A stretch of DNA of 64,000 nt, from positions 1 to 64,000 of the IMG/VR virus record IMGVR_UViG_3300046694_000296, one strand, 5' to 3'. Each line of letters starts with the position of its first letter. Positions within the stretch are counted from its first letter, which is position 1. Made by a program: the position numbers and the translations under genes. Below are positions 774-61,119 of the stretch, in pieces. Below the pieces are notes generated by a model that was given only the letters and a program-made list of their open reading frames with translations, was not told the origin of the DNA and ran no database searches.

Positions 774-797
774 AGGTAAGTCACCCGTGACTTACCT
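774..797. promoter_or_regulatory. Perfect copy of the dispersed palindromic box (AGGTAAGTCAC-CC-GTGACTTACCT)
   Basis: 11-bp perfect inverted arms with 2-bp spacer; TAAAAT at 802-807. Confidence 0.75.
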
Positions 798-807
798 AGC
801 GTAAAAT

Positions 808-838
808 AAAGGGCGTGGGCTTCGGCTCATGCCCTTTT
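808..838 (+). terminator. Rho-independent terminator after capsid gene
   Basis: AAAGGGCGTGGGC-TTCG-GCTCATGCCCTTTT hairpin with UUCG loop. Confidence 0.7.
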
Positions 839-856
839 GCACATCAGGAGTCACAT

Positions 857-1330
857 ATGAAGATCAAGATGGTCCAGCCGGGCTACGAGCAGTTCACGGG
901 CAACTTTGGCGGCGTCGAGTTCGTCGATGGCGTCTCGGTGGTCGATGTCGCGCCGATGATCGCGACGCGCATCGCCAACGTCGTGCGGGTCGAGAACGCC
1001 GAAAATGGCGTGAACCCGTCGGCCTCGCAAACGGCGCTCGACAGCTACTCGACGCCGATGGCGTTGCGCCCGCAAGATGTCCCGGCCGCCAAGCCCCAGA
1101 AATACACCGAAGCCGAGCTCGAAGTGATCGCCAGCAAGGAAGGCATCAAGGGCGTGCGCAAGATCGGCGATACGTTCGGCGTGAAGGCGACCGGCATCGC
1201 CGAGCTGATCGCGCTCATCCTGCGCGCGCAGGCGCCGGACGAGAAGGCCGACTTCCTGGGCGAAGTGCCCTCGGACGTCGTGAAGGCAGAAGAGCCGGTC
1301 GTCGAAACGCCGGCCCCAGCCGCGGAGTAA
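857..1330 (+). CDS. Phage head-associated hypothetical protein
   Basis: AGGAG RBS before ATG 857; position right after capsid gene. Confidence 0.7.
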   Translation: MKIKMVQPGYEQFTGNFGGVEFVDGVSVVDVAPMIATRIANVVRVENAENGVNPSASQTALDSYSTPMALRPQDVPAAKPQKYTEAELEVIASKEGIKGVRKIGDTFGVKATGIAELIALILRAQAPDEKADFLGEVPSDVVKAEEPVVETPAPAAE

Positions 1331-1333
1331 GAC

Positions 1334-4093: not shown

Positions 4094-4609
4094 GTGGCAA
4101 GCGATACAAAGAACGTAAAGATGGGCGTCTGCCTGGTCTATTACAAGGGCGTGGATCTGGGCTACACCCAGGGCGGCGTCCAAGTGACCGTGACCACGGA
4201 AACGCACAAGACGAACGTGGACCAGTTCGGCAAGACCACCGTCAACGAGCAGATCATGAGCCGTGACGTGTCGGTGAAGGTGCCCTTGGCGGAAACCACG
4301 CTGGAAAACCTCGTCACGACCATGCCGGGCGCGACGATCAGTGGCACGGGCTCGGACAAGAAGGCGATCGTCACGACCGGCGTGGGCGTGTCCCTGCTCG
4401 ATCTGGCGGGCGAACTGCGTCTGCACCCGAAGGGCATCCCGGCCGACGACTACAGCGAGGACTTCGTGATCCCGCTGGCGGCGACCTCGGGCGGCCTGAA
4501 CTTCGCCTACGAAGTCGAAAAGGAACGCATCTTCGACGTGACCTTCCAGGGCTACCCGGACCCGGCCACCGAAGAGCTGTTCCAGATCGGCGGCGCGCCG
4601 ACGCCGTAA
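4094..4609 (+). CDS. Major tail tube protein
   Basis: 'DLGYTQGGVQVTV...DQFG' siphovirus tube motif; AAGGAG RBS. Confidence 0.8.
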   Translation: MASDTKNVKMGVCLVYYKGVDLGYTQGGVQVTVTTETHKTNVDQFGKTTVNEQIMSRDVSVKVPLAETTLENLVTTMPGATISGTGSDKKAIVTTGVGVSLLDLAGELRLHPKGIPADDYSEDFVIPLAATSGGLNFAYEVEKERIFDVTFQGYPDPATEELFQIGGAPTP

Positions 4610-4633
4610 GAAAAAGTTACGCGTTACTGACCA

Positions 4634-4654
4634 AGGCCGGCGAAACGCCGGCCT
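4634..4654 (+). terminator. GC hairpin after tail tube gene (possible terminator/processing site)
   Basis: AGGCCGGC-GAAAC-GCCGGCCT; weak U-tract. Confidence 0.45.
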
Positions 4655-4674
4655 GCCTACATCGGATACCCATC

Positions 4675-9854: not shown

Positions 9855-10216
9855 GCTACACGACACTTCCGCACAACGACCTGCTGGACTCGAGCAAATT
9901 CCAGCAGGAGAAAGAGAACCCCGCGATGGCCTCCAAGATGGACGGAGGCTACGTGGTCACGCGCCCGAAGCACACGCGAAAACCCCGGCGCACGTTCACC
10001 TGCGGCTTCACCGACTTCACCGACGCGCAGCGCGCCGACATCGACGCGCACTTCGACGCGATGCACGGCGGCAGCGCGATCTTCTACTTCGTCCACCCGG
10101 TGAGCAAGGAGACGGTCTACGTGCGCTTCTCGACCGACTCCACGCTGCAGTGGTCGTATTCCGGCTCCGGGCGCATGCCGCTCTGGAGCGTCACTTTCAA
10201 ACTCGAAGAGGCGTAA
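9851..10216 (+). CDS. Distal tail protein (gpM/Dit-like)
   Basis: Follows tape measure; ends 'VTFKLEEA'. Confidence 0.7.
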   Translation: MSYTTLPHNDLLDSSKFQQEKENPAMASKMDGGYVVTRPKHTRKPRRTFTCGFTDFTDAQRADIDAHFDAMHGGSAIFYFVHPVSKETVYVRFSTDSTLQWSYSGSGRMPLWSVTFKLEEA

Positions 10217-10853: not shown

Positions 10854-11246
10854 ATGGATAAGTCACCCATTACATATGTTGACCTGATCGGGACACCCTT
10901 TCGGCGCGGCGCGCGCGGGCCAGACGAGTTCGATTGCTACGGCCTCGTCAAGTTTCTGATCGAGCGCGCCACGGGCCGCGAAGTGCCGGATTACCAGAGC
11001 CCGACGGACAGCGGCGCGACGCACGCGCTAATGATTACCTCGCGCGAGTTCTGGCACCGGCTGCCCGGCCAGCAGGTCGGCTCGATGGTGTTCTTCCGGA
11101 TCGGCCGTGAGGTCTGTCATGTCGGATATGTAATAAGTAACGGGTTATTCATTCACGCGTGGGAGCCATCGGGCGGCGTAACGATCGAGCGGCTCTCGGA
11201 GTGGGAAAAACGGATCGACGGGTTCTATGAATACATCGAAGGCTAA
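10854..11246 (+). CDS. NlpC/P60 tail tip protein (gpK-like)
   Basis: 'GTPFRRGARGPDEFDCYGL', 'HVG', 'FIHA' catalytic motifs. Confidence 0.85.
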   Translation: MDKSPITYVDLIGTPFRRGARGPDEFDCYGLVKFLIERATGREVPDYQSPTDSGATHALMITSREFWHRLPGQQVGSMVFFRIGREVCHVGYVISNGLFIHAWEPSGGVTIERLSEWEKRIDGFYEYIEG

Positions 11247-17368: not shown

Positions 17369-17387
17369 TTAGATTGCCGGTAAGTAA

Positions 17388-22375
<4,988 letters not shown>

Positions 22376-23393: not shown

Positions 23394-23477
23394 ATAAGTT
23401 ACGAGTCACTTACTATAATGGTGGATAGGCGGTCATCCCGACGGCCCTCCCACTTCCCACATTCACAGGAGCCATAC

Positions 23478-23816: not shown

Positions 23817-23898
23817 AATAAGTAAGCGGTGACTGGACAAAGGCGGTGCAGAATTGTTAACATCGCCTCTTCACACCATTCCGCGAGAGAGCGACGGC

Positions 23899-27358: not shown

Positions 27359-27481
27359 GTGGAACACTTGGGGCTCGGAAGCGCGTCCCTCTATATCTAT
27401 CCCATTTTCAATTCTTTCTATACTGATAAGTAGAAGCTTATTTTAATTTAGGGAACCGCGAGGAAGCCCCAAGTGATCCAC
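27359..27481 (+). promoter_or_regulatory. Long inverted repeat enclosing an AT-rich loop with TATACT; 3' arm covers the GTG start of ORF 27473
   Basis: GTGGAACACTTGGGGCT (27359-27375) / AGCCCCAAGTGATCCAC (27465-27481), 16 of 17 paired; inner CGCG and TCCCT/AGGGA pairs. Confidence 0.6.
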
Positions 27482-28174
27482 CACACCACGTTTTACGGCA
27501 AAGAACTGACGGTCGCGGACTGCGAAATCCTCGCGCTGACCCGCGTCGATCCCTCGCTGCGGGCGGCCGAGAGCCTGCTTTTCGGCCGCAAGTGGTTCGA
27601 CTACCGCGTCTTCCACCCCGTGCAAGCCACCTATCTCTTCGCCCACGAATACGCGGAAAGCACCAAGCGCGCATACGCCCGCCAAAAAGACATTCGCACA
27701 GTCGCGGGCGTGCAGGGGTTCGATGTCGAAAAGCTTTTCGAGAACCGCGAACTCTCCGCGATGTGGCGGGCACGTCAATCCTTTGATGCGATCGGCTGCC
27801 GCTACGACTTCGCCATCGACTTCATCATGAGGCGATTCTGTGAGCGCGGCTGGAGAGTGTGCCCCCGGCCCAACCAGCTCTACGCGGAGGAGGTCGTGCT
27901 CGACGTGCGCGACGCCTGGCAGCGCGAGTGCAAGGCAAAGATGCAGATCGCCAAGCAAGAGCGGTTCGATGCGCGCCGCTACACCGGCCACCCCGACCAG
28001 AAAGCCTACCAGGCGTGGCAAGTCGATCAGGTCAAAACCCGCGGCGGCAACCGAGCCATGCTGCTCGGACGACTGCTGCAGGAGAACGTGCTCGCCGAAG
28101 CGGTAGTGAGCGCGGCATTCGGCGAGGCGACCCTCTTACAAGCACGCAAGTTCGTTGTCTCATCCAATAAGTAA
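27473..28174 (+). CDS. Conserved phage protein heading the replication cluster
   Basis: 233 aa, phage-like codon usage, AGGA RBS; function not recognised. Confidence 0.7.
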   Translation: MIHHTTFYGKELTVADCEILALTRVDPSLRAAESLLFGRKWFDYRVFHPVQATYLFAHEYAESTKRAYARQKDIRTVAGVQGFDVEKLFENRELSAMWRARQSFDAIGCRYDFAIDFIMRRFCERGWRVCPRPNQLYAEEVVLDVRDAWQRECKAKMQIAKQERFDARRYTGHPDQKAYQAWQVDQVKTRGGNRAMLLGRLLQENVLAEAVVSAAFGEATLLQARKFVVSSNK

Positions 28175-28236
28175 TTCGTTACTATACTGGTGAGCAGACG
28201 ACCTAACGTCTCATTCAATTCAACCCGGAGTTTCAC

Positions 28237-30426: not shown

Positions 30427-31520
30427 ACGACGATCTCGGCGAGCTCCTCGAGCGCGTCGACATGGCTGCCTATCTCGACCGCGAGGGCATCTCCTACCGG
30501 GAGACGCACGGACGGTCGGGCCAGCAGTTGAACATTCGCGAGTGCCCGCTGTGCGGCAACAGCGATTGGAAGGTCTACGTCAATGCTGAGTCGGGCGTGG
30601 GCAACTGCTTTGCAGGCTCCCACCCGGCTGAAGAGCGCTTCTTCACGAAATACAAGTTCATCCGTGCCCACCTCGGCTCGCCGATGGGCGGTAAGGTGGT
30701 CGATCACATTCGCGTGTTCGCGCGTGAAATGGGCTGGCGGCCCGCGCGACGCGTCTCAGCCAAGGTCGAGAACGCACCGGGCGCGTGGGAGTTGCCCAAG
30801 CACGTCACGCTGCCGCACAACGGGCAGAACATGCCGTATCTGGAGAACCGCGGGATCGACTCGGAGCTCGCCGCCTATTTTCACCTCGGCTACTGCGCGA
30901 ACGGGGCGAGCTTCCGATACCTGTCTGAGCGTGGCTGGGCCTCGCAGGACTGGTCCCGTCGCATTCTGATCCCGGTCTATGACCTCGACGGCAAGATCGC
31001 GACCTTCCAGGGGCGTGACGTGACGGGCCGGGCAGAAAAGAAATACCTGTTCCCGCCGGGCATCGACGGCTCGGGCGTGCACCTGTTCAACGGGCTGAAC
31101 GTCCGCGACACGAGACGTATCGTGGTGGGTGAGGGCGCATTCGACGTGGCGGCGACCAAGATCGCGCTCGACGGCGACGCCGAGCTGCGCGACGTGGTGC
31201 CGGTGGGCACCTTCGGCAAGCACCTCTCCTCGGGCAGCGAGAACAGCCAGCTCGCAAAGTTCCAGACGTTGAAAGAGCGCGGCGTCGAAGAGGTAACGCT
31301 CATGTGGGACGGCGAGGTCCAGGCCACCGACGACGCGATTGTGGCGGGCCTGCTGCTCAAGTCAGTCGGCTTGCGCGTGCGCGTGGCGATGCTGCCGGCA
31401 GGGTGCGATCCGAACGAGGTGTCGGCCGACGTAGTGCGCCAGGCGTTCTACCAGGCGAGGCTGCTCGACCGCCGCTCGGCGCTGGAAATCATGACGCTTC
31501 GTCGCAAAATGAATGGATAA
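30423..31520 (+). CDS. DNA primase (Zn-finger + TOPRIM)
   Basis: CPLC..C..H zinc site, 'YLENRGI', 'FQGR', 'VGEGAFD', 'WDGE', 'DPNE'. Confidence 0.9.
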   Translation: MNDDLGELLERVDMAAYLDREGISYRETHGRSGQQLNIRECPLCGNSDWKVYVNAESGVGNCFAGSHPAEERFFTKYKFIRAHLGSPMGGKVVDHIRVFAREMGWRPARRVSAKVENAPGAWELPKHVTLPHNGQNMPYLENRGIDSELAAYFHLGYCANGASFRYLSERGWASQDWSRRILIPVYDLDGKIATFQGRDVTGRAEKKYLFPPGIDGSGVHLFNGLNVRDTRRIVVGEGAFDVAATKIALDGDAELRDVVPVGTFGKHLSSGSENSQLAKFQTLKERGVEEVTLMWDGEVQATDDAIVAGLLLKSVGLRVRVAMLPAGCDPNEVSADVVRQAFYQARLLDRRSALEIMTLRRKMNG

Positions 31521-31568
31521 GTTACGCGTTACTATACTGTTACATAACGATAAATCAGGGAGGGCGAA

Positions 31569-32045: not shown

Positions 32046-32056
32046 GAGAGAGAGTG

Positions 32057-32734
32057 ATGACCACCGAAACCGCCGTCGAAGCAAAACCGATTCTGCCGCC
32101 GTCCGTGTCTGCGGACGCGAAGCGCAACGCCTTCTACACGAAGTGCCCGGAGCAGCAATCGACCAAGCCCTACGCGATGTGCCAATACATCGCGGCCAAT
32201 CAGGGCGACGACTCGATCAAGACGCTCTACGGCGATTGTCTGAGCGCGATTCACCGCGGCCGCTGCGTCGCGGTCGGTATGCGCGAGGAAGAGGAGCTCA
32301 AGGGCCAGGCAATTTACTTCGTCGAGCGCGTCAAAGGCGAGGCGCTGGTCGCCGCGCAGACGACGTGGGCCGCAAGCGCGCCGAAGCGCGGGTATCAGCG
32401 CAACAAGTATTCAGAGGGCGCGAGCTTGCAGCCCGCGCCGCGCGTCGCTATCCCGCGCCCGAGCACGCCTGCGCCCGCACCGAAGAAACCCGCGTTCGAG
32501 TTCGACGGCAACATCTACGCCGCCGCGCTAAACGCCGCAGTGAAGAAGGAGCGCAACGCAACTAACGATCAGGCTACGCCTGCAAAGGTGACGCCCGCCG
32601 CTGCCGCGCCGGTCGCACCGACCCCGGCTCCCCAGCCGGAAGCCGCACCCGCACCCATCAACATGACCAGGCGCGCGGGCGAGTCGCCTCTCGAAATGGC
32701 TCGCCGCCTTCGCGCACAACAAGGGAGTAAGTAA
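32057..32734 (+). CDS. Hypothetical protein (4-Cys N-domain, Pro/Ala linker)
   Basis: GGAG RBS; four Cys in N-domain; terminal 'GESPLEMARR'. Confidence 0.7.
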   Translation: MTTETAVEAKPILPPSVSADAKRNAFYTKCPEQQSTKPYAMCQYIAANQGDDSIKTLYGDCLSAIHRGRCVAVGMREEEELKGQAIYFVERVKGEALVAAQTTWAASAPKRGYQRNKYSEGASLQPAPRVAIPRPSTPAPAPKKPAFEFDGNIYAAALNAAVKKERNATNDQATPAKVTPAAAAPVAPTPAPQPEAAPAPINMTRRAGESPLEMARRLRAQQGSK

Positions 32735-32737
32735 CAC

Positions 32738-34168
32738 ATGACTTCGATGACATCCTGCCAGGCATTCAAGGCGATCGAGAAAATCGCCGCGACGTCCCGC
32801 AAGAAAGACAAGGAGGCGATGGTCAAGCAGTTCCTCGCCTTCGACACGTTCAAGCGCGCGATCATCGCCGCGCTCGACCCGCTCGTGACCTACGGCATGC
32901 AGCAGGTGCCGGATCGCATCGACGGCGCAGCACCGGGCGCCAACACGTTCGAGAACGCGCCGATCTGGGAGACGCTCGACAAGCTGGCAAAGCGCACGCT
33001 CACCGGCAACGAAGCGCGCGACGAGGTGCAGCGCCTGATGACCTTCCTCACGCCCGAGTCGGCCGAGCTCTTCAAGCGCATCATCCGCAAGGACTTGCGT
33101 GCGGGCTTTTCCGAATCGACCGTCAATAAGGCATGGAAGGGCCTCATCCGCGAGTTCCCCTACATGCGCTGCGCGCTGCTCAAGGATGCGAAGCTCGACA
33201 CCTGGACGTGGGCCGAGGGCGTCATCTCGCAGGAGAAGGCCGACGGCATGTTCATGAATATCGACCACGAGGAGGGCGGTGTGGTCCGCATGACTAGCCG
33301 GCAGGGCACGCCATTCGATGTCGATGCGTTCGGCGAGTTTGCGGATCGCGTGCGTGCGCTGCTCACGCCGGGCACGCAGACGCATGGCGAGATGGTCGTG
33401 TTCGTCAATGGCAAGCTCGCTGCGCGTGAAATCGGCAACGGCATTCTGAACCGCGTAGCCGCGGGCGGCGCGTTCGGCCCGGACGAATCCCCGCTGTTCT
33501 ACGCATGGGATCAAATCCCGCTGGCTGCGGTCGCGCCGAAGGGCAAATACGAAGTCGGTTATCGCGATCGGCTGGTCGCGATGGCGGCGGGCCTGAAGAA
33601 AGGTGTGCCCACGCTCCAGCTCGGTCAGGCGATGATGATTCAGGTGATCCCGACGAAGCTGGTCAAATCGCTGGAAGAGGCGATGGTTCACTACCGCGAG
33701 CTGCTGGCGAAGGGCAAGGAAGGCACCATCATCAAGAACGGGGCCGCGATCTGGCGCGACGGCACGAGCAAGGAGCAGATCAAGCTCAAGCTCGAAGTGG
33801 ACGTCGATCTGGTCATCACGGGCATCGCACCGGGACGCGTGGGGACGAAAAACGAAGGCCGCGCCGGCGCGTTCAACTGCTCGAGCTCGGACGGCCAGCT
33901 GCGCGTCGATGTGACGGTCAAGAACGAGGATCTCCGGACCGCGGTTGACGCGAACGGCGATGACTTCATCGGTCGCATCATCGCAGTGCGGGCGAACGCG
34001 GTGATGAAGCCGAGCGAGAGCAGCGAGTTTCATTCGCTCTTCCTGCCGCGCATGGTCGAGGCGAGCTACCGGACGGACAAGAGCGAAGCCGACAGCCTCG
34101 AGTCGATCCTCGCACAGTTCGACGCCGCGGTCGGCGCGTCGCCGGCGAAGGTTGCGGAGGCCGCCTGA
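32738..34168 (+). CDS. ATP-dependent DNA ligase
   Basis: Motif I EKADG, 'HGEM', 'FYAWD', 'EGTIIK', 'KLK', 'LFLPR'. Confidence 0.93.
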   Translation: MTSMTSCQAFKAIEKIAATSRKKDKEAMVKQFLAFDTFKRAIIAALDPLVTYGMQQVPDRIDGAAPGANTFENAPIWETLDKLAKRTLTGNEARDEVQRLMTFLTPESAELFKRIIRKDLRAGFSESTVNKAWKGLIREFPYMRCALLKDAKLDTWTWAEGVISQEKADGMFMNIDHEEGGVVRMTSRQGTPFDVDAFGEFADRVRALLTPGTQTHGEMVVFVNGKLAAREIGNGILNRVAAGGAFGPDESPLFYAWDQIPLAAVAPKGKYEVGYRDRLVAMAAGLKKGVPTLQLGQAMMIQVIPTKLVKSLEEAMVHYRELLAKGKEGTIIKNGAAIWRDGTSKEQIKLKLEVDVDLVITGIAPGRVGTKNEGRAGAFNCSSSDGQLRVDVTVKNEDLRTAVDANGDDFIGRIIAVRANAVMKPSESSEFHSLFLPRMVEASYRTDKSEADSLESILAQFDAAVGASPAKVAEAA

Positions 34169-40310: not shown

Positions 40311-40366
40311 CAACCGAGGTATCAAGGTATGTTGGTATCAAGATACCAACCGAGGTATCAAAATAC
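40311..40366. promoter_or_regulatory. Candidate centromere (parS)/par operator
   Basis: CAACCGAGGTATCAA at 40311 and 40347, palindrome GTTGGTATC-AA-GATACCAAC at 40331-40350, repeated GGTAT; upstream of parA. Confidence 0.65.
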
Positions 40367-40615: not shown

Positions 40616-40641
40616 AAAAAACCCACGTCTGAGCGTGGGTT
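40616..40641 (-). terminator. Terminator of XRE regulator gene
   Basis: AACCCACG-TCTGAG-CGTGGGTT with A-run on its left (U-tract on minus strand). Confidence 0.75.
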
Positions 40642-40675
40642 CATATCCAACAAGTATGCGCCAATGGGTGCTCCC

Positions 40676-41095
40676 TTATTTGTCTGTTCGCTTGTTGTAA
40701 TCCTTCAGAACATGGCGAATTGCTCCATTGAACTCAGGATCGTCAAAGTCCACGTCAGCACCTTTGAGCTCTTCCGAGACTATCCGCTGGAAGTCTTTCT
40801 GCGATTTCGTCACGAACTTGTCGCCGAGCACCTCGTCGATGACCTTCCATGCATCCGGCATGTATTCGTTCATCACGAGCTTCAGTAAGTGCGCCGGATC
40901 GACTCCCAACACGATCGCCATTGCTCGGACCTTGTTGATCGGCAGCTTGGTCTTGCCTTGCTTGAACAGCGTGATGACGTTGCGGTTCGGATATTCGAGC
41001 GCATCGCATATCTCAGCCTGCGTCTTGCCGCTCAAGTCGATCGCGCGAGTGATGTATTCCGCCACCGAGAGTGGCTGCTGTTTCTTCGTGGTCAT
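40676..41095 (-). CDS. XRE-family HTH regulator (putative repressor)
   Basis: 'GKTQAEICDALEY.NRNVITLFKQGKTKLP...V..MA..LGVDP' HTH; divergent from lytic genes. Confidence 0.82.
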   Translation of the reverse strand: MTTKKQQPLSVAEYITRAIDLSGKTQAEICDALEYPNRNVITLFKQGKTKLPINKVRAMAIVLGVDPAHLLKLVMNEYMPDAWKVIDEVLGDKFVTKSQKDFQRIVSEELKGADVDFDDPEFNGAIRHVLKDYNKRTDK

Positions 41096-41111
41096 GTTTC
41101 CCCCAGATTGT

Positions 41112-41297
41112 TAGTAATTAGTGACATACAGATTGTGAGAACAAATTGGTAACCGCTAACTTTCCCTCATGTGTTTGATTATAGAACGCAAAATTGGTTG
41201 CCGAGAAAAAAACACTGCCGATGCTGATGGCGATGCTGTTTGCTGAAGTTGCATCGTGTTCGGTCGCGCACACTACAATATAAGTTAGACGTTACAT
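41112..41297. promoter_or_regulatory. Divergent control region with three copies of the palindromic box
   Basis: Boxes at 41112-41127, 41147-41162, 41282-41297; AT-rich; TACAAT at 41274-41279. Confidence 0.6.
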
Positions 41298-41337
41298 AAC
41301 AAGTGACGTAATTCTAACCCTACCGAGGAGTTGCCTG

Positions 41338-41577
41338 ATGTTGCAGAATTTCACCATCGTGTCCCTGAGCCAAGACCAGGCGATCGTTCTGTTGGCCGAG
41401 ACGATCGAGGCCGGGAGCACGTTGGATGGGGGTTCGGTGCAAACGACCGTATGCCGTCATCCCGCGATTGGCGAGCTCATCCTGGTCCAGAACGCACTCG
41501 GGACGTCTGCCGTAGCACTCGACAAAGCCCAAATTCCTGCGTTAAGTGATTGGTTATCTCCTAGTCTGACCCATTGA
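41338..41577 (+). CDS. Small hypothetical protein
   Basis: GAGGAG RBS; first gene of rightward operon. Confidence 0.6.
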   Translation: MLQNFTIVSLSQDQAIVLLAETIEAGSTLDGGSVQTTVCRHPAIGELILVQNALGTSAVALDKAQIPALSDWLSPSLTH

Positions 41578-43954: not shown

Positions 43955-44089
43955 ATCTTCCCGCAGGTGAATCACTTTGCCTGCATAGGATAGTAAGTGG
44001 TGACTTGACGTAGCCAAGAGTAACCACTTACTATTTCACCTGTAGCGAATCACAACCAATTTTAATTTTTCTCTGCATCGGAGGATTCA

Positions 44090-45301: not shown

Positions 45302-45325
45302 TCGGATAAGTAACAGGTAACTATC

Positions 45326-45964
45326 ATGCAATTGGCCCAATCGACTGTAACGAATGCCCGCACCTCCACGCGCTACGAGGACCACACGGGGATGCTGCAC
45401 AAACTGGCAAAACGCGGCTGGGGCCGGTTGCAGGAGGCAGGGCTCTCCCTGCCTTACGACGACGTGTTCCAGCAGATGTGCGAGTCGTTCGTGAAGTGTC
45501 AGGCGACCTACAAGGCTGACACCGGCTTCACGTTCTCGGCGTATTACGGTCGCTCGATCTGGAACAACTTCAACAAGTGGGCCGAGCGCCAGATCGAGGA
45601 AAAGCACACGCTTGGCCTCGTCTCGGTCGAGTCGCTGTGCGGCGCTGACGATGAAGGGGAGGGCGACGCCTACGAATTCATCGAGCAAGAGGACGAAGAC
45701 GACACGCCCGAAGATCGCCTGGCCGCGCGTCAGGAGAGCCACCGGCTCGCCCGCATGCTCTCGGACGACGCGAAGCGCATGGTGGCGCTGCTCGCGCACC
45801 AGACCCCGGCGCTTGAGCGCTGGATGGAGGAGCGCAACGCCCGGATGCTCAAGAAGACGCATCACATCAATCTGTGGCTGCTCGGCGAGTTCCTCGGTTT
45901 CGACCGCAACAAGACGAGCCGCCTGCGCCTGGAGCTCGAACGCGTCTACGGCGTGGAGCTGTAA
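45326..45964 (+). CDS. Sigma70-family-like factor (region 2 plus C-terminal HTH)
   Basis: 'DDVFQQ...F.K....Y....G.TFSAY....I.N' region-2 pattern; 'LSD..K' and 'LGEFLGFDR..TSRL' region-4-like. Confidence 0.65.
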   Translation: MQLAQSTVTNARTSTRYEDHTGMLHKLAKRGWGRLQEAGLSLPYDDVFQQMCESFVKCQATYKADTGFTFSAYYGRSIWNNFNKWAERQIEEKHTLGLVSVESLCGADDEGEGDAYEFIEQEDEDDTPEDRLAARQESHRLARMLSDDAKRMVALLAHQTPALERWMEERNARMLKKTHHINLWLLGEFLGFDRNKTSRLRLELERVYGVEL

Positions 45965-50639: not shown

Positions 50640-50785
50640 AGGATCTTTCAACCTTTTCGAGGTCCGGTAAGTGACGCGTTACTATACTTGACGATGCAGG
50701 GCGAGACGGTGACGAAGCTGTCACAGCCTCGTCCGCAAAACCTGTGACTTACTACCTCCAAACTCTGACTAAGGAAACAAAAACC

Positions 50786-54816: not shown

Positions 54817-55252
54817 GCTCAAGGTCAAAGAGTGGAAGCCCTCGACCTGCGGCAAATTCCAGTGCGCCAAGGTCAAGAAGGGCCACAGCCTCTACGGCGA
54901 GATCCGCAAGTATCCGAACGGCATGTCGATCTACTGGGCCTTTCGCAAGCCCGACGAGGTGTTCGTGGAGCTCGACGCCTGGGCGGTGGATACCGAGACG
55001 ATCTCCGTCATGAAGAGCCGACGCGTCACGCACATCGGCATTCTGGTGAGCAACGGCGACCAATACCTCACGCGCATCGAGACGATGACCGACAAGGACA
55101 AGGGCGCCGTGGTCCTGAACTACAGCAAGCACAAGGGCGCTCGCGGCAAGTTCGGCGCGCGCCAGTGGTATCTGCCGCGCTCGCAGTTCGTGCAGCAACT
55201 CGCGCCGCCGGAGTCGACGCTGGAGCAGATGAAGATCAGAGGGCGCAGATAA
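54809..55252 (+). CDS. Hypothetical phage protein
   Basis: Overlapping operon position, coherent codon usage. Confidence 0.7.
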   Translation: MAELKVKEWKPSTCGKFQCAKVKKGHSLYGEIRKYPNGMSIYWAFRKPDEVFVELDAWAVDTETISVMKSRRVTHIGILVSNGDQYLTRIETMTDKDKGAVVLNYSKHKGARGKFGARQWYLPRSQFVQQLAPPESTLEQMKIRGRR

Positions 55253-55308
55253 GTAAGCCGTTACGTGTTTGCTACAATCGGTCATTCTGAAATGAGGGAA
55301 CCAACACG

Positions 55309-55716
55309 ATGATTCTAGCCAGTGCTCTGCTGTGCCTTACTTTGAACGTGTATCACGAAAGCCGGGACCAACCCATCCTCGGGCAATACGCCGTCGCCGC
55401 CGTCACCATGAACCGCGCGGGCGACGATCCGGCCAAGGTCTGCGAGGTCGTCACGCAGCCGCATCAATTCAGCTGGACGACCACTAAGCTCGCGCGCGAC
55501 CGCAAGGGCTGGCGGCTCAAGACGGCGGGCGTGCCCAAAGACGACTTCGCCTGGATGATCGCGAGCCGCATCGCCTACAACACGCTCACCGGCAAGAAGA
55601 TCGACCTCACGCGCGGCGCGACCTACTTCCACACGAAAGCCGTGCGCCCAAGCTGGCGCGAGAAGTTCATCCGGGCTGTCACCATCGGCGACCACGTTTT
55701 TTATCGCGTCACGTAA
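55309..55716 (+). CDS. Cell wall hydrolase, SleB/Hydrolase_2 family
   Basis: 'CLTLNVYHESR.Q...GQ.AVA.VT.NR', 'QFSW', 'GATYFH', 'IGDHVFY'. Confidence 0.9.
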   Translation: MILASALLCLTLNVYHESRDQPILGQYAVAAVTMNRAGDDPAKVCEVVTQPHQFSWTTTKLARDRKGWRLKTAGVPKDDFAWMIASRIAYNTLTGKKIDLTRGATYFHTKAVRPSWREKFIRAVTIGDHVFYRVT

Positions 55717-55788
55717 GCAACGGGTTACTATACTGTCACCTGTAGCGCACAAGTTTCTCACCTTTCAACCACTCAGGAGTCACACCGC

Positions 55789-57500: not shown

Positions 57501-59462
57501 ATGGAAATTCTCAAACTTCGGGCAGTCAACTTCCTGACGCTCGGCGACTCGGGCGACCTGTTGCTCAAGGACCGCGGGCTCGTCCTCATTCAGGGCGTGA
57601 ACAAGGACGACACATCAACCGAATCGAACGGTGCGGGCAAGAGCTCCATCGCCGACGCACTGTGCTGGGCGCTCTTTGGCGCGACCGCGCGCGAAGAGTC
57701 CGGTGATTCGGTCATCAATGAGAAGGCGAAGAAGGGCACCTACGTGTCCGTCGTCGTGCAGGACGGCGAGACGATCTACGACATTCGTCGCCACCGCAAG
57801 GACAAGCAGTTCAAGAACGCGACCACAATCACGCGCTGGAACCCGGCCGTCGAGTATCAGAACGGCGCGCAGGGCGAGCGCATCGAGAAGGGCACCGAGA
57901 AAGAGATCCAGCTCCAGATCAACGAGATCGTCGGCTGCAACTACGACGTGTTCAAGTCGGCGATCTACGCGGGCCAGGAGGACATGCCCGACCTGCCGAA
58001 AATGACCGACAAGCCGCTCAAGATGCTGATCGAGAAGGCGTCGGGCATCGAGCGGCTCGAATCGGCCTACAACATCGCGAACCGCAAGCACGACGAGGCG
58101 AAGGCGGCGGTCGAGTCGGTCAACACGAAGATGGGGCTCTTGGAGAACCAGATCGTCAACTGGAAGGTGTCGGTTGCGCAGCTGGAGACGCAGCACGCAC
58201 AGTTCGAGGCCGCGCGCCCGAGCGTGCAACAGCAGTTCCTCGACCAGGCTGCGGCTGCCGCCGATGCGCTCAAGAAGAACTTCGCCGCCTATCAGGGACT
58301 CAACGAGGCCGCAGCAGCGAAGGAACGCGACGAGTTGCAAGCGATCCTCGCAGATCACCGCAAGTTCACCGACCAGCGCGACCAGCTGCTCAAGGCAGAG
58401 CATGCGGCGTCGCGTGCGTATCACGCCCGGAAGGGCGACTTCGAGCGCGCCCGCGCGCAAGTGTTGGCAGCGGTCGAAGCGGTGAAGAACGCGCCGGCTG
58501 CGATGGAAAAGCCCTGCACCGAGTGCGGCAAGCCCCACACCGCCGAAGAGAAGGACGAGTTCGTCGCGCACCAGACCAAGCGCGCGAAGGAGCTGAGTGT
58601 CACCGCCGGTCAGATCCAGACCGAGGTGACGGAGCTGCAGAACGTCGCGGCCGCCGCCGGGAAAGAGCTCGAAGAGTTTACGGCGACGATCCCTGACGTG
58701 TCGGCGACCAGCACCCGGCTCGCGCAGGTGCAGCAGACACTCACCGCGTGCCAGCAGTTGAAGAACGTGATCCAGCGTCAGAAGGCCGACCACGATCGTC
58801 TGAAGGAAGAAGGGCAGAAGGCGCTCGTCGCGGTCAACCCGCACCAGTCGGCGATCGACATGGGCCGGGAGAACGTCGGCAAATGCGAGCAGGCGATCGA
58901 CAAGCTGAAAGCCGACGCGGCCGAGCGCATCAAGGCGGCCGAGGTTGCCGCGAGCGTCGCGAAGGTGTTCAGCCCCGGTGGCGTGCGCGCGCAGATTCTT
59001 GATACGGTGACGCCGTTCCTGAACGACCGCACGAGCGACTACCTCTCCGCGCTCTCGGACGGGAACATCAGCGCCGTCTGGTCGACGCTCACGACGACCA
59101 CGAAGGGCGAGCTCCGCGAGAAGTTCAACATTGAAGTCGAGAACGCCACGGGCGCAAAGTCGTTCGGTGGTCTGTCGGGCGGGGAAAAGCGCAAGGTGCG
59201 GCTCGCGACGATGCTCGCGCTGCAAGACTTGGTTGCCTCGCGCGCGACGAAGCCGCTCTCCCTCTGGGTGGGCGACGAGATCGACGATGCGCTGGACGCA
59301 GCGGGCCTCGAGCGCCTCATGACCGTGCTGGAGCAGAAGGCGCGCGAGAAGGGCACCGTGCTCATCATCAGCCACGAGTCGCTGTCCGATTGGTGTGACC
59401 AAATCGCCACCGTCACGAAGGAGGGCGGGCAATCGACGGTCAGCGGGGCGCTGTCGGCATGA
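57501..59462 (+). CDS. SbcC/Rad50-like ATPase (gp46-like)
   Basis: NGAGKSS, CTEC zinc hook in coiled coil, LSGGE, 'DEIDDALD', 'IISH'. Confidence 0.93.
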   Translation: MEILKLRAVNFLTLGDSGDLLLKDRGLVLIQGVNKDDTSTESNGAGKSSIADALCWALFGATAREESGDSVINEKAKKGTYVSVVVQDGETIYDIRRHRKDKQFKNATTITRWNPAVEYQNGAQGERIEKGTEKEIQLQINEIVGCNYDVFKSAIYAGQEDMPDLPKMTDKPLKMLIEKASGIERLESAYNIANRKHDEAKAAVESVNTKMGLLENQIVNWKVSVAQLETQHAQFEAARPSVQQQFLDQAAAAADALKKNFAAYQGLNEAAAAKERDELQAILADHRKFTDQRDQLLKAEHAASRAYHARKGDFERARAQVLAAVEAVKNAPAAMEKPCTECGKPHTAEEKDEFVAHQTKRAKELSVTAGQIQTEVTELQNVAAAAGKELEEFTATIPDVSATSTRLAQVQQTLTACQQLKNVIQRQKADHDRLKEEGQKALVAVNPHQSAIDMGRENVGKCEQAIDKLKADAAERIKAAEVAASVAKVFSPGGVRAQILDTVTPFLNDRTSDYLSALSDGNISAVWSTLTTTTKGELREKFNIEVENATGAKSFGGLSGGEKRKVRLATMLALQDLVASRATKPLSLWVGDEIDDALDAAGLERLMTVLEQKAREKGTVLIISHESLSDWCDQIATVTKEGGQSTVSGALSA

Positions 59463-60370
59463 ACGCAAAGATCGCGGCGGGTCTGAAAGCCCGCCAGTTC
59501 AGCAACCGCGACGAGCTCATCTGGACCCCGCCCTCGAAGCCGCAGACCGTGGAGGAGTTCCAGAAGGAGTATATGACCGTGATCTCCACCCCGCGGCAGT
59601 TGGGCAAGAGCCACTTCGACGAGGAGTTCAAGAAGTTCGCCGTCGAGCAGATTGAGAAAGCGACGAGCAAGGCGCTCACGGGCGCGACGCTCACCGCGAG
59701 CACGATCACTGTGCCTCCGGTCACGCTCACCGCGGAGGAGCTCAAGAAGCAGTATGAAGAGTTGCGCAAGCTCGCGATGTCCGGATCGCCGGCACCGTGG
59801 GCGCCACCGCCCGCAACCGGCGGCGGGCTGCTTCGCCAGCCGACCGTGTTGGGCGCCGCGCCCGCACCGAAGAAGCCGGGCGTGCTCGACAGCCTTGTTA
59901 CGAGCGCCACCGAGTTCACACGATTTCAGGAGAAAAACCAGATGACAGATGCAGAGAAGGAAGCGGCGAAAGCAGTCGCCGCAGCGATCAACGGGCTGCT
60001 CACGCCGTCGGGTGCGGGTCCGTTCAAGCTCACCGGCCCGGCGCAATTGACGATCAAGACGCGGCAGGGCCAATACAAGAAGAAGGCGTTCATGGGCGAT
60101 GAGGAGATACGCCTCACGACGAGCTATGCAGGCTCGCGCGACGGCGTGATCTGCGTGTTCAAAAACACCGTGCCCGTCGAATACGCCGCGATCGAGATTC
60201 CGCTGATGGAAGCGCGCGAGCTTCTGTCGGGCTTTTCGAAATACGTCGATTCGCTCAACATTGCGGACATGGACAACATCGTCGCGGGCATCGAGCAGAA
60301 CATCGCGCAGGCGGTCGCCGTCGAGCGCGAAGAGGCAATGGCTGTATCCCCCGAGTTTGGTAGCTGGTAA
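59459..60370 (+). CDS. Hypothetical protein with C-terminal SPEFGSW
   Basis: ATGA overlap; possible internal restart at Met 59942 after AGGAG. Confidence 0.65.
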   Translation: MNAKIAAGLKARQFSNRDELIWTPPSKPQTVEEFQKEYMTVISTPRQLGKSHFDEEFKKFAVEQIEKATSKALTGATLTASTITVPPVTLTAEELKKQYEELRKLAMSGSPAPWAPPPATGGGLLRQPTVLGAAPAPKKPGVLDSLVTSATEFTRFQEKNQMTDAEKEAAKAVAAAINGLLTPSGAGPFKLTGPAQLTIKTRQGQYKKKAFMGDEEIRLTTSYAGSRDGVICVFKNTVPVEYAAIEIPLMEARELLSGFSKYVDSLNIADMDNIVAGIEQNIAQAVAVEREEAMAVSPEFGSW

Positions 60371-60381
60371 AGGAAAAGAAC

Positions 60382-60987
60382 ATGAAACTGAAGATAGTTG
60401 GACTCGATCCGTCTTTGACCCACACGGGCATCGCGATCATGGAATACGACACGATCACGGGCACGCTCGGCACGCCGGAGCTGCGCCTGATCGTGACCGA
60501 GGGGCAGGGCAAGAAGAAGGTGGTGCGCCAGAACTCGGATGACGTGCGTCGCGTGCGTGAAATCGTCAAGGGTGTGCATGACGCCTGCAATGGCGCGCTC
60601 TTCGCCGTCTCTGAGATGCCCACGGGCGCGCAGAGTTCGCGCGCTGCGTTCGCGTTCGGCATGGTGATCGGCGTGCTCGCCGGCTTGCCGGTGCCCATGA
60701 TTCAGGTCAGCCCGCTCGAAGTGAAGCTGGCAGCGGTCGGGCACAAACAGGCCGCGAAGGAAGAAATGATTGAGTGGGCACACCAGAAGTATCCGGCGGC
60801 GAACTGGCTGCGTCACGAGAAGAACGGTCGCGTCAAAACCAAGCTCGGCTTCAAGGAATGGAAGGCGGGCGATTTGGTGAACGACAACGAGCACCTGGCC
60901 GATGCCATCGCGGTCGCCGAAGCCGGGTTGCTCACCGACCAGTTCAAGCAGGCGGTGGCGATGCTGTCCTTCGCGAAGGCAGCTTAG
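60382..60987 (+). CDS. ruvC: RuvC-like Holliday junction resolvase
   Basis: 'IVGLDPSLTHTG', 'E', 'P.EVK....G...A.KEEM', 'ADAIAVA'. Confidence 0.88.
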   Translation: MKLKIVGLDPSLTHTGIAIMEYDTITGTLGTPELRLIVTEGQGKKKVVRQNSDDVRRVREIVKGVHDACNGALFAVSEMPTGAQSSRAAFAFGMVIGVLAGLPVPMIQVSPLEVKLAAVGHKQAAKEEMIEWAHQKYPAANWLRHEKNGRVKTKLGFKEWKAGDLVNDNEHLADAIAVAEAGLLTDQFKQAVAMLSFAKAA

Positions 60988-61119
60988 TCCCGGAAGCGGG
61001 CAGCCAACCTATACTGAAGAGGGAAGGGGTCGCGAGCAGCGGCTTATTTTTTGGCTTTGCTGTAGAGTAACCACTGACTTACAATCCATTCCCCCTCCGA
61101 ACGAACCCGAGAAACATAC

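What the first reader, a model, noticed from the sequence alone, without database searches (positions are those of the whole stretch)
774..61085. Genome-wide regulon: about 22 copies of a 16-bp palindrome AAGTNAC-NN-GTNACTW at lytic gene boundaries
Seen: copies start at 778 (perfect), 4043, 4614, 10860, 11135, 17382, 23396, 23820, 28169, 31519, 32729, 41112, 41147, 41282, 41544 (weak), 43991, 44018, 45308, 50669, 55251, 55715 and 61065. They are AT-rich islands in a GC-rich genome, nearly all at gene junctions. They precede structural, lysis, replication, recombination and nrd genes. None was noticed in the 34.9-40.6 kb maintenance island. Established: dyad sites of this kind bind dimeric regulators, and phage P1 controls its lytic genes through dispersed operators. 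Inference: one protein controls the whole lytic programme through distributed operators. The best candidate is the XRE protein at 40676-41095, whose own upstream region carries three copies. I know of no description of this box for this phage-plasmid group.
Basis: partly seen in the sequence, partly recalled or inferred. Interest (0 to 1): 0.9.

Follow-up and report, generated by a model that had tools for sequence, protein, structure and literature searches.

The report
Genome-wide repressor operators in phage-plasmid
An 18-base palindrome recurs about 40 times at gene junctions of a roughly 109-kb phage-plasmid; it is most likely the binding site through which one small phage repressor silences nearly all lytic genes, and relatives, including phage-plasmids of clinical bacteria, carry lineage-specific versions.

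Summary
The core is an 18-bp dyad, T-AAGT-N-AC-NN-GT-N-ACTT-A. There are 21 strong sites in the window (about 1 expected) and 38-40 in the whole ~108.9-kb genome. Almost all lie in the ~8% of sequence between genes.

It is a protein site, not a hairpin: the N positions are non-complementary in 13 of 19 sites. It is not a promoter core either. The phage's -10-like box (ACTATACTG) lies either over the right arm or directly upstream of the dyad, so the two are separate elements.

The element belongs to the SSU5 supercommunity of phage-plasmids (CobT/MoxR/DnaE synteny, Rep3 iterons, ParA). Relatives keep the dyad:
- Rhizobium phage RHph_X66 has 39 sites.
- E. coli phage Cyrano has a 14-bp version.
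- Cupriavidus and Acinetobacter plasmids carry diverged dyads alongside diverged XRE recognition helices.

The best binder is the XRE/Cro-CI-type protein at 40676-41095. It has clustered sites in its own control region and conserved synteny, and its Cyrano homologue is expressed in lysogens. Binding and repression are untested.

This is a new member of a known kind (P1 C1 operators, L5 stoperators). I found no description of it in the searchable literature.

The parts
777..794 (.). operator dyad TAAGTCACCCGTGACTTA (perfect palindrome), between gene 29-760 and a terminator-like hairpin
   Evidence: 25.3 bits
4042..4059 (.). operator dyad, 1 nt after a TTGACT-18-TATAGT promoter-like site; precedes the Ig-domain major-tail-like gene 4094-4609
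4613..4630 (.). operator dyad, directly after the major-tail-like gene and before a GC-rich hairpin
10859..10876 (.). operator dyad at the tail L-like / NlpC-P60-like gene junction
11134..11151 (.). operator dyad 75 nt before the J-like central tail fibre gene 11227-16812
17381..17398 (.). operator dyad filling the spacer of TTGCCG-17-TACAAT; precedes the tail fibre gene
23395..23412 (.). operator dyad (exact) overlapping TACTAT/TATAAT boxes
23819..23836 (.). operator dyad overlapping the first hexamer of TGGACA-18-TAACAT
27427..27444 (.). weak dyad (8.0 bits) 2 nt after a TATACT box (27419-27424)
28168..28185 (.). operator dyad whose right arm runs into TATACT (28183-28188); overlaps the stop codon of gene 27473-28174
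31518..31535 (.). operator dyad (exact) with TATACT at 31533-31538; overlaps the stop codon of gene 30288-31520
32728..32745 (.). operator dyad spanning the stop of gene 32030-32734 and the ATG (32738) of the ATP-dependent DNA ligase
40676..41095 (-). XRE/Cro-CI-type HTH protein (139 aa), the proposed repressor; it has its own terminator-like hairpin at 40619-40642
41111..41128 (.). operator dyad in the leader of the XRE gene, flanked by direct repeats CAGATTGT
   Evidence: 18.0 bits
41146..41163 (.). operator dyad downstream (on the minus strand) of a TATAAT box at 41179-41184 that could drive the XRE gene
   Evidence: 15.1 bits
41281..41298 (.). operator dyad 2 nt after TACAAT (41274-41279), a candidate early rightward promoter for orf79/CobT-like; a weaker overlapping dyad lies at 41293-41310
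41338..41577 (+). conserved small ORF (79 aa), first gene of the rightward operon; function unknown
41543..41560 (.). weak dyad (6.8 bits) kept in relatives L004-L006
43990..44007 (.). operator dyad overlapping the TTGACG hexamer (44005-44010) before the CobS/MoxR-like gene
44017..44034 (.). operator dyad overlapping the TACTAT hexamer (44029-44034) of the same promoter-like site
45307..45324 (.). operator dyad (exact) ending 1 nt before the ATG of the sigma-like gene
45326..45964 (+). divergent sigma-70 region-2-like protein; possible reader of the -35-less ACTATACTG boxes, not of the dyad
50668..50685 (.). operator dyad (exact) with TATACT at 50683-50688; precedes the gp32-like SSB gene
55250..55267 (.). 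operator dyad before the endolysin-like gene 55309-55716 (TACAAT 6 nt downstream)
55714..55731 (.). operator dyad overlapping the endolysin stop codon, with TATACT at 55729-55734
61064..61081 (.). operator dyad between TTGCTG and TACAAT (61080-61085); precedes NrdA 61120-63393

Best explanation
The 18-bp dyad T-AAGT-N-AC-NN-GT-N-ACTT-A is the operator of a dimeric phage repressor, most likely the 139-aa XRE/Cro-CI-type protein encoded at 40676-41095. That gene sits on the minus strand next to the plasmid-maintenance genes (Rep3, ParA, ParE). In the plasmid-prophage state the repressor would occupy about 40 operators. At most of them it would block RNA polymerase directly, because the dyad either fills the spacer and overlaps the -10-like box, or covers the start site just downstream of that box. 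At junctions with no recognisable promoter it would act as a roadblock to read-through. Two weaker operators in its own leader would give negative autoregulation, and one operator covers the divergent early promoter. The protein has no peptidase domain, so induction probably works through an antirepressor or loss of repressor rather than RecA-driven self-cleavage. What is shown: the motif, its statistics, its placement, its conservation, its lineage-specific variants, and the fold of the candidate. What is inferred: binding, repression, roadblocking and the induction route.
For: 1. Enrichment and placement. There are 41 matches where 2.0 are expected. The whole genome has 38-40 sites with a bimodal score distribution. 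18-19 of 21 window sites lie in the ~8% that is non-coding, typically 33-65 nt before a start codon.

2. A protein site, not a hairpin. Positions 5 and 12 are non-complementary in 13 of 19 sites, while the flanking positions are near-invariant.

3. Separate from the promoter core. CTATACT occurs 12 times on the + strand (2.45 expected) and 3 times on the minus strand. Ten of 13 TATACT boxes touch a dyad, either on its right arm (28183, 31533, 50683, 55729, 64710) or 0-2 nt upstream of it (27419, 66003, 68869, 70023, 78183). Five of the 7 + strand sigma-70-like hits in the first 60 kb overlap a dyad at different offsets.

4. Immunity-region layout. Three to four dyads lie between the divergent XRE gene and orf79. 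Relatives L004, L007 and L014-L016 keep the same layout.

5. Conservation. Syntenic sites persist in relatives whose sigma-like protein is 77-86% identical to the window's, with the N positions changed. RHph_X66 has 39 near-perfect sites, either in the spacer of promoters with good first hexamers or just after GCGCTATAA boxes.

6. Variants track the XRE protein. In Cyrano, TAAGT-N4-ACTTA occurs 8 times where 0.1 are expected. In the Cupriavidus plasmid, CAGT-N4-ACTG occurs 15 times where 1.3 are expected, and 0 times in this genome. In the Acinetobacter plasmid, AGTAAGNNCTTACT occurs 5 times where 0 are expected. All of these keep the same HTH(-)/small-ORF/CobT/MoxR/DnaE synteny, and their recognition helices differ.

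7. Fold. The AlphaFold model (pLDDT 84) has a five-helix HTH plus three C-terminal helices. Foldseek matches Stl, 434 Cro, P22 c2, ImmR, DdrO and SinR.

8. Expression. The Cyrano homologue CYRAN_45 is expressed 10-fold above local background in lysogens, whereas the ParB-like genes are not listed (PMC9928086).
Against: - No binding, transcription-start or expression data exist for this phage.
- RHph_X66 shares the TAAGTAA half-site, yet its helix differs from the window's at 7 of 13 positions. There the XRE gene points the same way as the lytic genes, and that phage was isolated as a plaque former. The regulator may therefore also, or instead, time the lytic cycle.
- XRE homologues that share the T-L-x-K-Q-G-K-T-K signature but sit outside the SSU5-like gene order (L017, L025-L027, L030-L034) show no enrichment of the dyad within 10 kb.
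- Most promoters in the window lack a recognisable first hexamer, so promoter assignments rest on -10-like boxes alone.
- The 14-bp and 18-bp spacings (Cyrano, X66) are hard to fit to a single rigid dimer geometry.
- An immunity operator that stays this conserved across alpha-, beta- and gammaproteobacterial phages is unusual.
Confidence: 0.6

Rival explanations
1. The dyad is an operator, but for a different phage protein. The best alternative is the pair of ParB_N-domain proteins encoded just before the terminase genes (contig 99314-99976 and 100460-101101, outside the window). They would act like KorB of plasmid RK2, a ParB-family global silencer with dispersed palindromic sites.
For: Both paralogues are conserved in RHph_X66, Cyrano and the Cupriavidus plasmid (42-48% identity for paralogue 1), which is more than the XRE protein. 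Their operon has a dyad directly upstream in the window's genome (99281), in X66 (14130) and in Cyrano (105109). The model shows ParB_N, an acidic disordered linker, then a conserved extended segment (RFKV) followed by two helices, which is compatible with a ribbon-helix-helix DNA-binding module. From my own knowledge, KorB binds 12 palindromic sites around RK2.
Against: Pfam and PDB sequence searches find only ParB_N and no DNA-binding domain. The putative DNA-reading strand is almost identical in the window and in Cupriavidus (MRFKV / LRFKT; FGFKDV / FGFKDI) although their dyads differ. In paralogue 2 it differs between the window and X66 although their dyads agree. The genes lie in the lytic orientation and are absent from the list of Cyrano genes expressed in lysogens. 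There is one upstream site, not a cluster.
Confidence: 0.12
2. The dyad is a positive promoter element: the site of a phage activator or of the sigma-like protein 45326-45964, replacing the missing -35 box. From my own knowledge this would resemble the inverted repeat near -22 of P1 late promoters that need Lpa.
For: Most dyad-linked -10-like boxes in the window lack a first hexamer (and my reading of the flanks). In the arrangement where the box overlaps the right arm, the dyad centre lies about 20 bp before the predicted start. A sigma-like gene is present and is itself preceded by a dyad.
Against: In the second arrangement the dyad lies downstream of the -10-like box, over the predicted start, where an activator cannot work. 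In RHph_X66 the dyad fills the spacer of promoters that already have good first hexamers such as CTTGCA and TTGGAC. The motif is symmetric, unlike sigma-factor promoters. Cyrano has the dyad but no sigma-like gene. Some sites span stop/start junctions with no -10-like box (32729, 4614). Two TATACT boxes stand alone without a dyad (54170, 61010).
Confidence: 0.12
3. A host protein (a global regulator or a nucleoid protein) binds the dyad.
For: The AGT...ACT core is shared by phages of alpha-, beta- and gammaproteobacteria.
Against: The flanking bases and the spacing change between lineages that infect related hosts: Cupriavidus against the window's Burkholderiales-like relatives, and E. coli against Acinetobacter. 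The dyad does not match the LexA, CtrA, CRP, IHF or DnaA consensus sites as I recall them. The sites cluster at the phage's own regulator gene. The host genome could not be examined.
Confidence: 0.05
4. The dyad acts as a nucleic-acid structure (an RNA hairpin, terminator or cruciform), or as a target for restriction-modification, packaging or recombination, rather than in transcription control.
For: It is a palindrome. It contains two GTNAC units. Two copies (778, 4614) are followed by GC-rich hairpins.
Against: The arms are not kept complementary at positions 5 and 12, and a 2-nt centre cannot form a loop. No T-run follows the dyad itself. Where the -10-like box overlaps the right arm, the dyad lies upstream of the predicted start and would not be transcribed from that promoter. 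There is no Rfam match. Placement at gene starts and next to -10-like boxes is not what a restriction, packaging or recombination target would show.
Confidence: 0.03

Closest known systems
Mycobacteriophage L5 / Cluster A immunity repressor (gp71) with operators and 'stoperators'
   Same: One small HTH repressor has 20-30 sites spread over the genome. Some sit in promoters; most sit at short intergenic junctions, where they block elongation. Site consensus and repressor co-vary between sub-lineages, and some members are extrachromosomal with parABS (PMC6550527).
   Different: L5 sites are 13-bp and asymmetric, are bound by a monomer, and are oriented with transcription. Here the site is an 18-bp dyad with only mild arm asymmetry, implying a dimer. 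The hosts are Proteobacteria. The proteins were not compared for relatedness.
Phage-plasmid P1 C1 repressor and its dispersed operators (my own knowledge: at least 17 asymmetric 17-bp operators; late genes controlled separately through Lpa)
   Same: It is a plasmid prophage whose lytic functions are held down by one repressor acting at many scattered operators, including its own gene.
   Different: P1 operators are asymmetric. C1 is not an XRE-type protein. P1 late and structural operons are controlled indirectly, whereas here structural, lysis and replication operons all carry the dyad. Pfam found no family in the window's protein.
Lambdoid Cro/CI-type repressors (434, P22 c2, lambda)
   Same: The HTH fold is the same (434 Cro TM 0.78, P22 c2 TM 0.82 on the target). 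Operators are palindromes of 14-18 bp. The repressor gene and the early lytic promoter diverge, with several operators between them.
   Different: Lambdoid phages have about six operators in one or two clusters; this genome has about 40 spread throughout. There is no S24 peptidase domain. The C-terminal part is a three-helix bundle that most resembles Stl of SaPIbov1.
KorB/KorA global regulation of IncP plasmid RK2 (my own knowledge)
   Same: Palindromic operators are scattered around a replicon and coordinate many operons. ParB_N proteins are present in this phage too.
   Different: KorB sites lie beside or far from promoters and act with a partner and CTP. Here the sites overlap the core promoter. 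The ParB_N proteins fit the operator variants worse than the XRE protein does.
Streptomyces phage phiC31 repressor c and its conserved inverted repeats (my own knowledge; not found in the searchable library)
   Same: A GC-rich temperate phage has a 17-bp inverted repeat at many early-region loci next to phage-specific promoters, bound by the repressor.
   Different: The host phylum, repressor family and motif sequence all differ. As far as I recall, the phiC31 sites are confined to the early region.

Membership tests
SSU5-supercommunity phage-plasmid (SSU5/pHCM2, pKpn, AB_1, RHEph10-like) | Siphovirus structural module together with a T4-like replication/recombination set, including the CobT-like, MoxR/CobS-like and DnaE genes in conserved order | tested here: met
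   The gene order is shared with RHph_X66, Cyrano, Cupriavidus and Acinetobacter plasmids. The MoxR-like protein hits about 1000 PLSDB plasmids of these groups.
SSU5-supercommunity phage-plasmid (SSU5/pHCM2, pKpn, AB_1, RHEph10-like) | Plasmid replication and partition genes on the same replicon | tested here: met
   There is a Rep3 initiator (37969-38712) with at least 8 iterons at 38708-39140, a ParA (39544-40254) and a ParE toxin. Circularity and plasmid state cannot be shown from a metagenome contig.
Cro/CI (XRE, HTH_3) repressor-operator system | Five-helix XRE-type HTH protein | tested here: met
   PHROG families for regulators and repressors match. The AlphaFold model has pLDDT 84. Foldseek matches 434 Cro, P22 c2, ImmR, DdrO and Stl. 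The Pfam HTH_3 model itself did not score.
Cro/CI (XRE, HTH_3) repressor-operator system | Palindromic operators of 14-18 bp overlapping core promoters, with a cluster between the repressor gene and a divergent early promoter | tested here: met
   Promoters are consensus matches only; no start sites are known.
Cro/CI (XRE, HTH_3) repressor-operator system | The protein binds the operator and represses | not testable with these tools
   This needs EMSA or footprinting, ChIP-seq and reporter assays.
CI/LexA-type SOS-cleavable repressors | C-terminal S24 peptidase domain | tested here: not met
   The protein is 139 aa with an all-helical C-terminus and no peptidase family hit.
Dispersed-operator prophage repressors (L5 stoperator type) | Twenty or more repressor sites genome-wide, mostly at short intergenic junctions | tested here: met
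   There are 38-40 sites per 108.9 kb, placed at junctions.
Dispersed-operator prophage repressors (L5 stoperator type) | Asymmetric site bound by a monomer and oriented with transcription | tested here: not met
   The site is a dyad. The arms score 11.1 against 9.6 bits, a mild asymmetry explained by overlap with -10-like boxes.
P1 C1 repressor family | Homology to C1 and a 17-bp asymmetric operator | tested here: inconclusive
   No direct comparison with C1 was made. Pfam found nothing, and the fold matches are to Cro/CI-type proteins. The operator is symmetric, so that feature is not met.
KorB/ParB-type global silencer | ParB_N CTPase domain joined to a sequence-specific DNA-binding domain that recognises the dispersed palindrome | tested here: inconclusive
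   The ParB_N domain is present. No HTH domain was found, and the C-terminal strand plus two helices is only compatible with a ribbon-helix-helix. Variation in that strand does not follow operator variation.
Promoter of a phage sigma factor | Asymmetric bipartite element at a fixed distance from the start site | tested here: not met
   The motif is symmetric, sits in two registers relative to the -10-like box, and is present in Cyrano, which has no sigma-like gene.
Intrinsic terminator / structured RNA | Arms kept complementary, a loop of at least 3 nt, a T-run, or a match to a known RNA family | tested here: not met
   Thirteen of 19 sites are non-complementary at positions 5 and 12. The centre is 2 nt. 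There is no Rfam hit.

The most novel reading that the evidence does not exclude
The dyad is not just a lysogeny operator. It would be the shared cis-element of a two-layer silencing system conserved across the whole SSU5 supercommunity. In this reading the XRE protein marks the sites, and the two ParB_N proteins (a CTPase-like domain, an acidic linker and a ribbon-helix-helix-like tail) load or spread from them. That would be a phage counterpart of KorA/KorB long-range silencing, with the 4-bp-stepped spacings (AGT-N4-ACT, N8, N12) reflecting alternative or overlapping binding registers.
Probability: 0.1. Interest if true: 0.8.

Novelty: new member of a known kind. Interest (0 to 1): 0.55.

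Why it matters
SSU5-type phage-plasmids are common in Klebsiella, Escherichia, Salmonella, Acinetobacter and many environmental Proteobacteria, and some carry resistance genes. How they hold their lytic genes silent is, as far as I could find, undescribed.

A recognisable operator with about 10-40 copies per genome, paired with a syntenic repressor gene, offers three things:
- a direct and cheap handle for mapping their transcription units and predicting immunity groups from sequence, since the dyad variants differ between lineages;
- a way to test induction mechanisms;
- a second, independent example, dimeric and palindromic, of the many-operator silencing known from P1 and Cluster A mycobacteriophages. 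That bears on how regulons with dozens of sites change specificity.

Tried and rejected
- Megablast of the window against phage and plasmid collections found only an 83%-identical piece of dnaE, so relatives had to be reached through proteins.
- tblastn of the sigma-like protein against phages found nothing.
- A genome-contig scan with the XRE protein alone found nothing. The alignment-based scan mostly returned homologues in unrelated contexts without the dyad.
- Exact-palindrome counting was too insensitive on 10-20-kb loci and was replaced by a matrix scan.
- I looked for -35 boxes 17 nt before the TATACT boxes and found none that were consistent.
- I considered ECF-type promoters (GTAAC ... 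CGT) and rejected them, because nothing is conserved 16-17 nt downstream.
- The Roseobacter phage-plasmid repressor paper and the heteroresistance preprint concern unrelated elements.
- The exact consensus TAAGTAACNNGTTACTTA has only 3 hits in IMG/VR.
- The 11-mer CACCTGTAGCG found after two dyads is not significant by count.
- No tRNA or Rfam family lies in the window.
- I did not fetch the related Yersinia plasmid, because it is a virulence plasmid.

Full report
**Observation.** AAGTNACNNGTNACTW has 5 distinct exact sites where none is expected. At up to 2 mismatches it has 41 strand-matches where 2.0 +/- 1.8 are expected.

Aligning the sites shows that the conserved unit is 18 bp, T-AAGT-N-AC-NN-GT-N-ACTT-A. 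A2, A6, T11 and A13 are invariant, and position 5 prefers A while position 12 prefers T. A symmetrised matrix finds 21 sites of 15-25 bits in the window where about 1.3 are expected. A matrix built from only the five exact sites recovers the same set.

Sites 3203 and 47028 are chance hits. By my GC3-based gene map about 92% of the window is coding, yet 18-19 of 21 sites lie in or across intergenic junctions, usually 33-65 nt before the next start codon. Several overlap the stop codon of the upstream gene.

**What the replicon is.** The window has 63% G+C. Almost all genes are on the + strand:
- a lambda-like siphovirus tail module (tape measure, J-like fibre, tail fibres);
- an ATP-dependent ligase;
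- after a minus-strand island, a CobT-like gene, a MoxR/CobS-like gene, a divergent sigma-like gene, DnaE, a gp32-like SSB, an exonuclease, a UvsX/RecA-like gene, an endolysin, SbcCD and NrdA.

The island (34.9-41.1 kb) carries a ParE toxin, a Rep3 initiator flanked by at least eight iterons, a ParA, and the XRE-like gene 40676-41095.

The window is the first 64 kb of a 215,656-bp IMG/VR contig. I walked along that contig. The genome unit is about 108.9 kb, and a second, 78-90% identical genome follows head to tail.

The XRE protein and the gene order tie the element to three groups: Rhizobium phages RHph_X66, B1VFA and RHEph10; E. coli and Klebsiella SSU5-like phage-plasmids; and, through the MoxR-like protein, about 1000 plasmids of the SSU5 supercommunity. 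The closest named relatives of one conserved protein are in Burkholderia (70% identity), so the host is probably a member of the Burkholderiales. That is not established.

**Whole-genome picture.** The complete unit has 38-40 dyads with a clearly bimodal score distribution: 14-26 bits for the sites, against a background tail below 10 bits. Outside the window they precede the nrdB/thyX region, many small early genes, the ParB_N operon and the terminase-portal-capsid module.

**Protein site, not structure, and not the promoter itself.** Positions 5 and 12 are complementary in only 6 of 19 sites, and the centre is 2 nt, so neither RNA nor cruciform pairing is under selection. Rfam finds nothing.

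The phage has its own -10-like box. CTATACT occurs 12 times on the + strand (2.45 expected) and 3 times on the minus strand. Ten of 13 TATACT boxes touch a dyad in one of two arrangements:
- the box runs off the right arm (GTTAC-TATACT-G at 28183, 31533, 50683, 55729, 64710), or TACAAT/TACTAT occupy that place (17382, 23396, 61065);
- the box ends 0-2 nt before the dyad (27419, 66003, 68869, 70023, 78183; likewise TACAAT before 41282 and TATAGT before 4043).

Five of the seven + strand sigma-70-like matches in the first 60 kb overlap dyads, at different offsets. At 44005-44034, both hexamers of one promoter-like site are each covered by a dyad. One symmetric element in two registers relative to the -10 box, over the spacer or over the start site, is what a repressor operator looks like. 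It is not what an activator site or a sigma-factor promoter looks like. The mild excess of information in the upstream arm (11.1 against 9.6 bits) is explained by the overlap with -10-like boxes.

**Conservation and variants.**
- Close relatives, whose sigma-like protein is 77-86% identical to the window's, keep dyads at syntenic junctions with changed N positions.
- More distant prophages and phage-plasmids found through XRE homologues (42-48% identity) keep the dyad whenever they keep the CobT/MoxR/DnaE order: L014, L015, L016, L024 and a 113-kb Massilia contig L029 have 4-10 sites per locus where 0.7 or fewer are expected.
- RHph_X66, whose XRE protein is only 30% identical, has 39 near-perfect TAAGTAA-N4-TTACTTA sites. 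They lie either in the spacer of promoters with good first hexamers (CTTGCA ... TACAAT) or 2-5 nt after GCGCTATAA boxes and just before the ribosome-binding site.
- E. coli phage Cyrano has mainly a 14-bp form: TAAGT-N4-ACTTA occurs 8 times where 0.1 are expected.
- A Cupriavidus plasmid with the same synteny has instead AGTCAGT-N4-ACTGACT (CAGT-N4-ACTG occurs 15 times where 1.3 are expected, and never in this genome).
- An Acinetobacter plasmid has ATTAGTAAGCGCTTACTAT(AAT).

The invariant core across all of these is AGT...ACT. A 14-base version of the pattern pulls many 95-118-kb contigs out of IMG/VR.

**Who binds.** The XRE-like protein is the best candidate, for these reasons:
- It sits on the maintenance strand with its own terminator-like hairpin.
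- Its control region holds the densest cluster of dyads, two of them in its leader and one over the divergent early promoter. Relatives conserve this layout.
- Its model is a five-helix Cro/CI-type HTH plus a helical C-terminal domain. It matches Stl, 434 Cro, P22 c2, ImmR, DdrO and SinR.
- The segment N39-x-x-T-x-x-K-x-G-K-T-K-x-P52 is nearly invariant among homologues that share the TAAGT dyad. It is altered in the Cupriavidus (PNLMAMISNGNTR) and Acinetobacter (QNMVSFIVRGKSK) proteins, whose dyads differ.
- Its Cyrano homologue is listed among genes expressed in lysogens, as the putative master repressor (PMC9928086).

There are caveats. The X66 helix also differs at several positions while its half-site is the same. 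Homologues outside the SSU5-like context lack the dyad nearby. None of this is a binding experiment.

The sigma-like protein is a poor candidate for the dyad, because the motif is symmetric and the gene is absent from Cyrano. It may instead read the -35-less ACTATACTG boxes.

Two conserved ParB_N proteins, with an acidic linker and a possible ribbon-helix-helix tail, are a real rival. But their putative DNA-reading strand does not follow operator variation, and they are not among the genes expressed in Cyrano lysogens.

**Mechanism proposed.** A dimeric XRE-type repressor, made with the plasmid-maintenance genes, occupies about 40 operators. It excludes RNA polymerase at promoters, where the dyad lies over the spacer and -10 box or over the start site. 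It blocks read-through at junctions without promoters (778, 4614, 32729, 45308). It limits its own synthesis through the two leader sites. There is no peptidase domain, so release is probably by an antirepressor or by dilution or loss of repressor. All of this is inference from anatomy.

**Comparison with known systems, and novelty.** The closest known systems are:
- Cluster A mycobacteriophage repressors, with 20-30 operators and stoperators (PMC6550527);
- P1 C1 with its dispersed operators, and the phiC31 repressor with its conserved inverted repeats (both from my own knowledge);
- KorB of RK2, as a formal analogue.

The protein fold and the dyad are of the ordinary Cro/CI type. What is unusual is the number and spread of the sites, and that lineage-specific versions run through the whole SSU5 supercommunity. 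Searches of the open literature found no description of it, though subscription journals were not covered.

I therefore file it as a new member of a known kind. It is of solid interest to people who work on phage-plasmids, with the main claim, that the XRE protein binds and represses, still to be tested.

Noticed in passing
window 1-64000; contig positions 108903 onward (L023): The window is the start of a 215,656-bp IMG/VR contig. That contig holds two related ~108-kb genomes head to tail: window bases 1-2880 reappear from contig position 108,903 at 78-90% identity. This could be an assembly chimera of two co-occurring strains or a real heterodimer.
   Followed up: partly
window 38708-39140: At least eight iterons (core TGGGAGGAATTCCGG, in both orientations) lie directly upstream of the Rep3 initiator gene 37969-38712. 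This is a typical iteron origin, and none of the TAAGT dyads lies here.
   Followed up: partly
window 40311-40325 and 40347-40361: An exact 15-bp direct repeat, CAACCGAGGTATCAA, occurs twice just upstream of the ParA gene (39544-40254, minus strand). It may be a par operator or centromere-like site.
   Followed up: no
window 27419, 28183, 31533, 50683, 54170, 55729, 61010; contig 64710-86000: A strand-biased -10-like box ACTATACTG (CTATACT 12 times on + against 3 on minus; 2.45 expected) has no recognisable -35 box. Two copies (54170, 61010) stand without a dyad. It may be the target of the divergent sigma-like protein 45326-45964.
   Followed up: partly
window 44037-44047 and 55737-55747: The same 11-mer, CACCTGTAGCG, lies 3 and 6 nt after two dyads (after 44018-44033 and 55715-55730) and is kept in relative L004. 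It is not significant by count, but the position is suggestive of a shared leader.
   Followed up: partly
window 41104-41111 and 41129-41136: The direct repeat CAGATTGT flanks the dyad nearest the XRE start codon.
   Followed up: no
window 811-838 and about 4636-4655: GC-rich hairpins follow two dyads after the highly expressed-looking genes 29-760 and 4094-4609 (major-tail-like). The first has a T-run and looks like a terminator. The order is stop codon, then dyad, then hairpin.
   Followed up: no
window 32728-32745 and 45307-45324: One dyad contains both the stop codon of gene 32030-32734 and the ATG of the DNA ligase. Another ends 1 nt before the ATG of the sigma-like gene, leaving no room for a separate leader.
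   Followed up: partly
contig 99314-99976 and 100460-101101 (L023:8196-8858, 9342-9983): Two paralogous ParB_N proteins have an acidic disordered linker and a C-terminal strand plus two helices (ribbon-helix-helix-like). They are conserved in RHph_X66, Cyrano and a Cupriavidus plasmid, always just before the ABC-ATPase/terminase genes and always with a dyad upstream.
   Followed up: partly
contig 95455 and 97029 (L023 about 4337 and 5911): Two dyads in a second minus-strand island (YoeB-like toxin region) share extended flanks: GGGAACATG..TT.CC upstream and GTGTCCTAT downstream. This suggests a duplicated regulatory cassette.
   Followed up: no
L145/L147 (Cupriavidus plasmid NZ_CP090528) and L146 (Acinetobacter plasmid NZ_CP046537): These lineages carry their own dispersed dyads (AGTCAGT-N4-ACTGACT; ATTAGTAAGCGCTTACTAT) at gene junctions, often overlapping TATAAT boxes. 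Together with the 14-bp form in Cyrano, the family shows spacings stepped by 4 bp (AGT-N4, N8 and N12-ACT), which no simple single-dimer geometry explains.
   Followed up: partly
window 36384-36479: A 12-nt periodic G+C-rich repeat (GCGGGTGCGxTT-like, about 8 units) lies inside the unannotated minus-strand ORF 36242-36973, which has no family match.
   Followed up: no
window 11227-16812: The J-like central tail fibre protein (1861 aa) also matches a tail-assembly-protein-I family near its N-terminus (residues 61-208). No separate K/I pair of normal size is present, only a short NlpC/P60-like gene at about 10854-11246.
   Followed up: no
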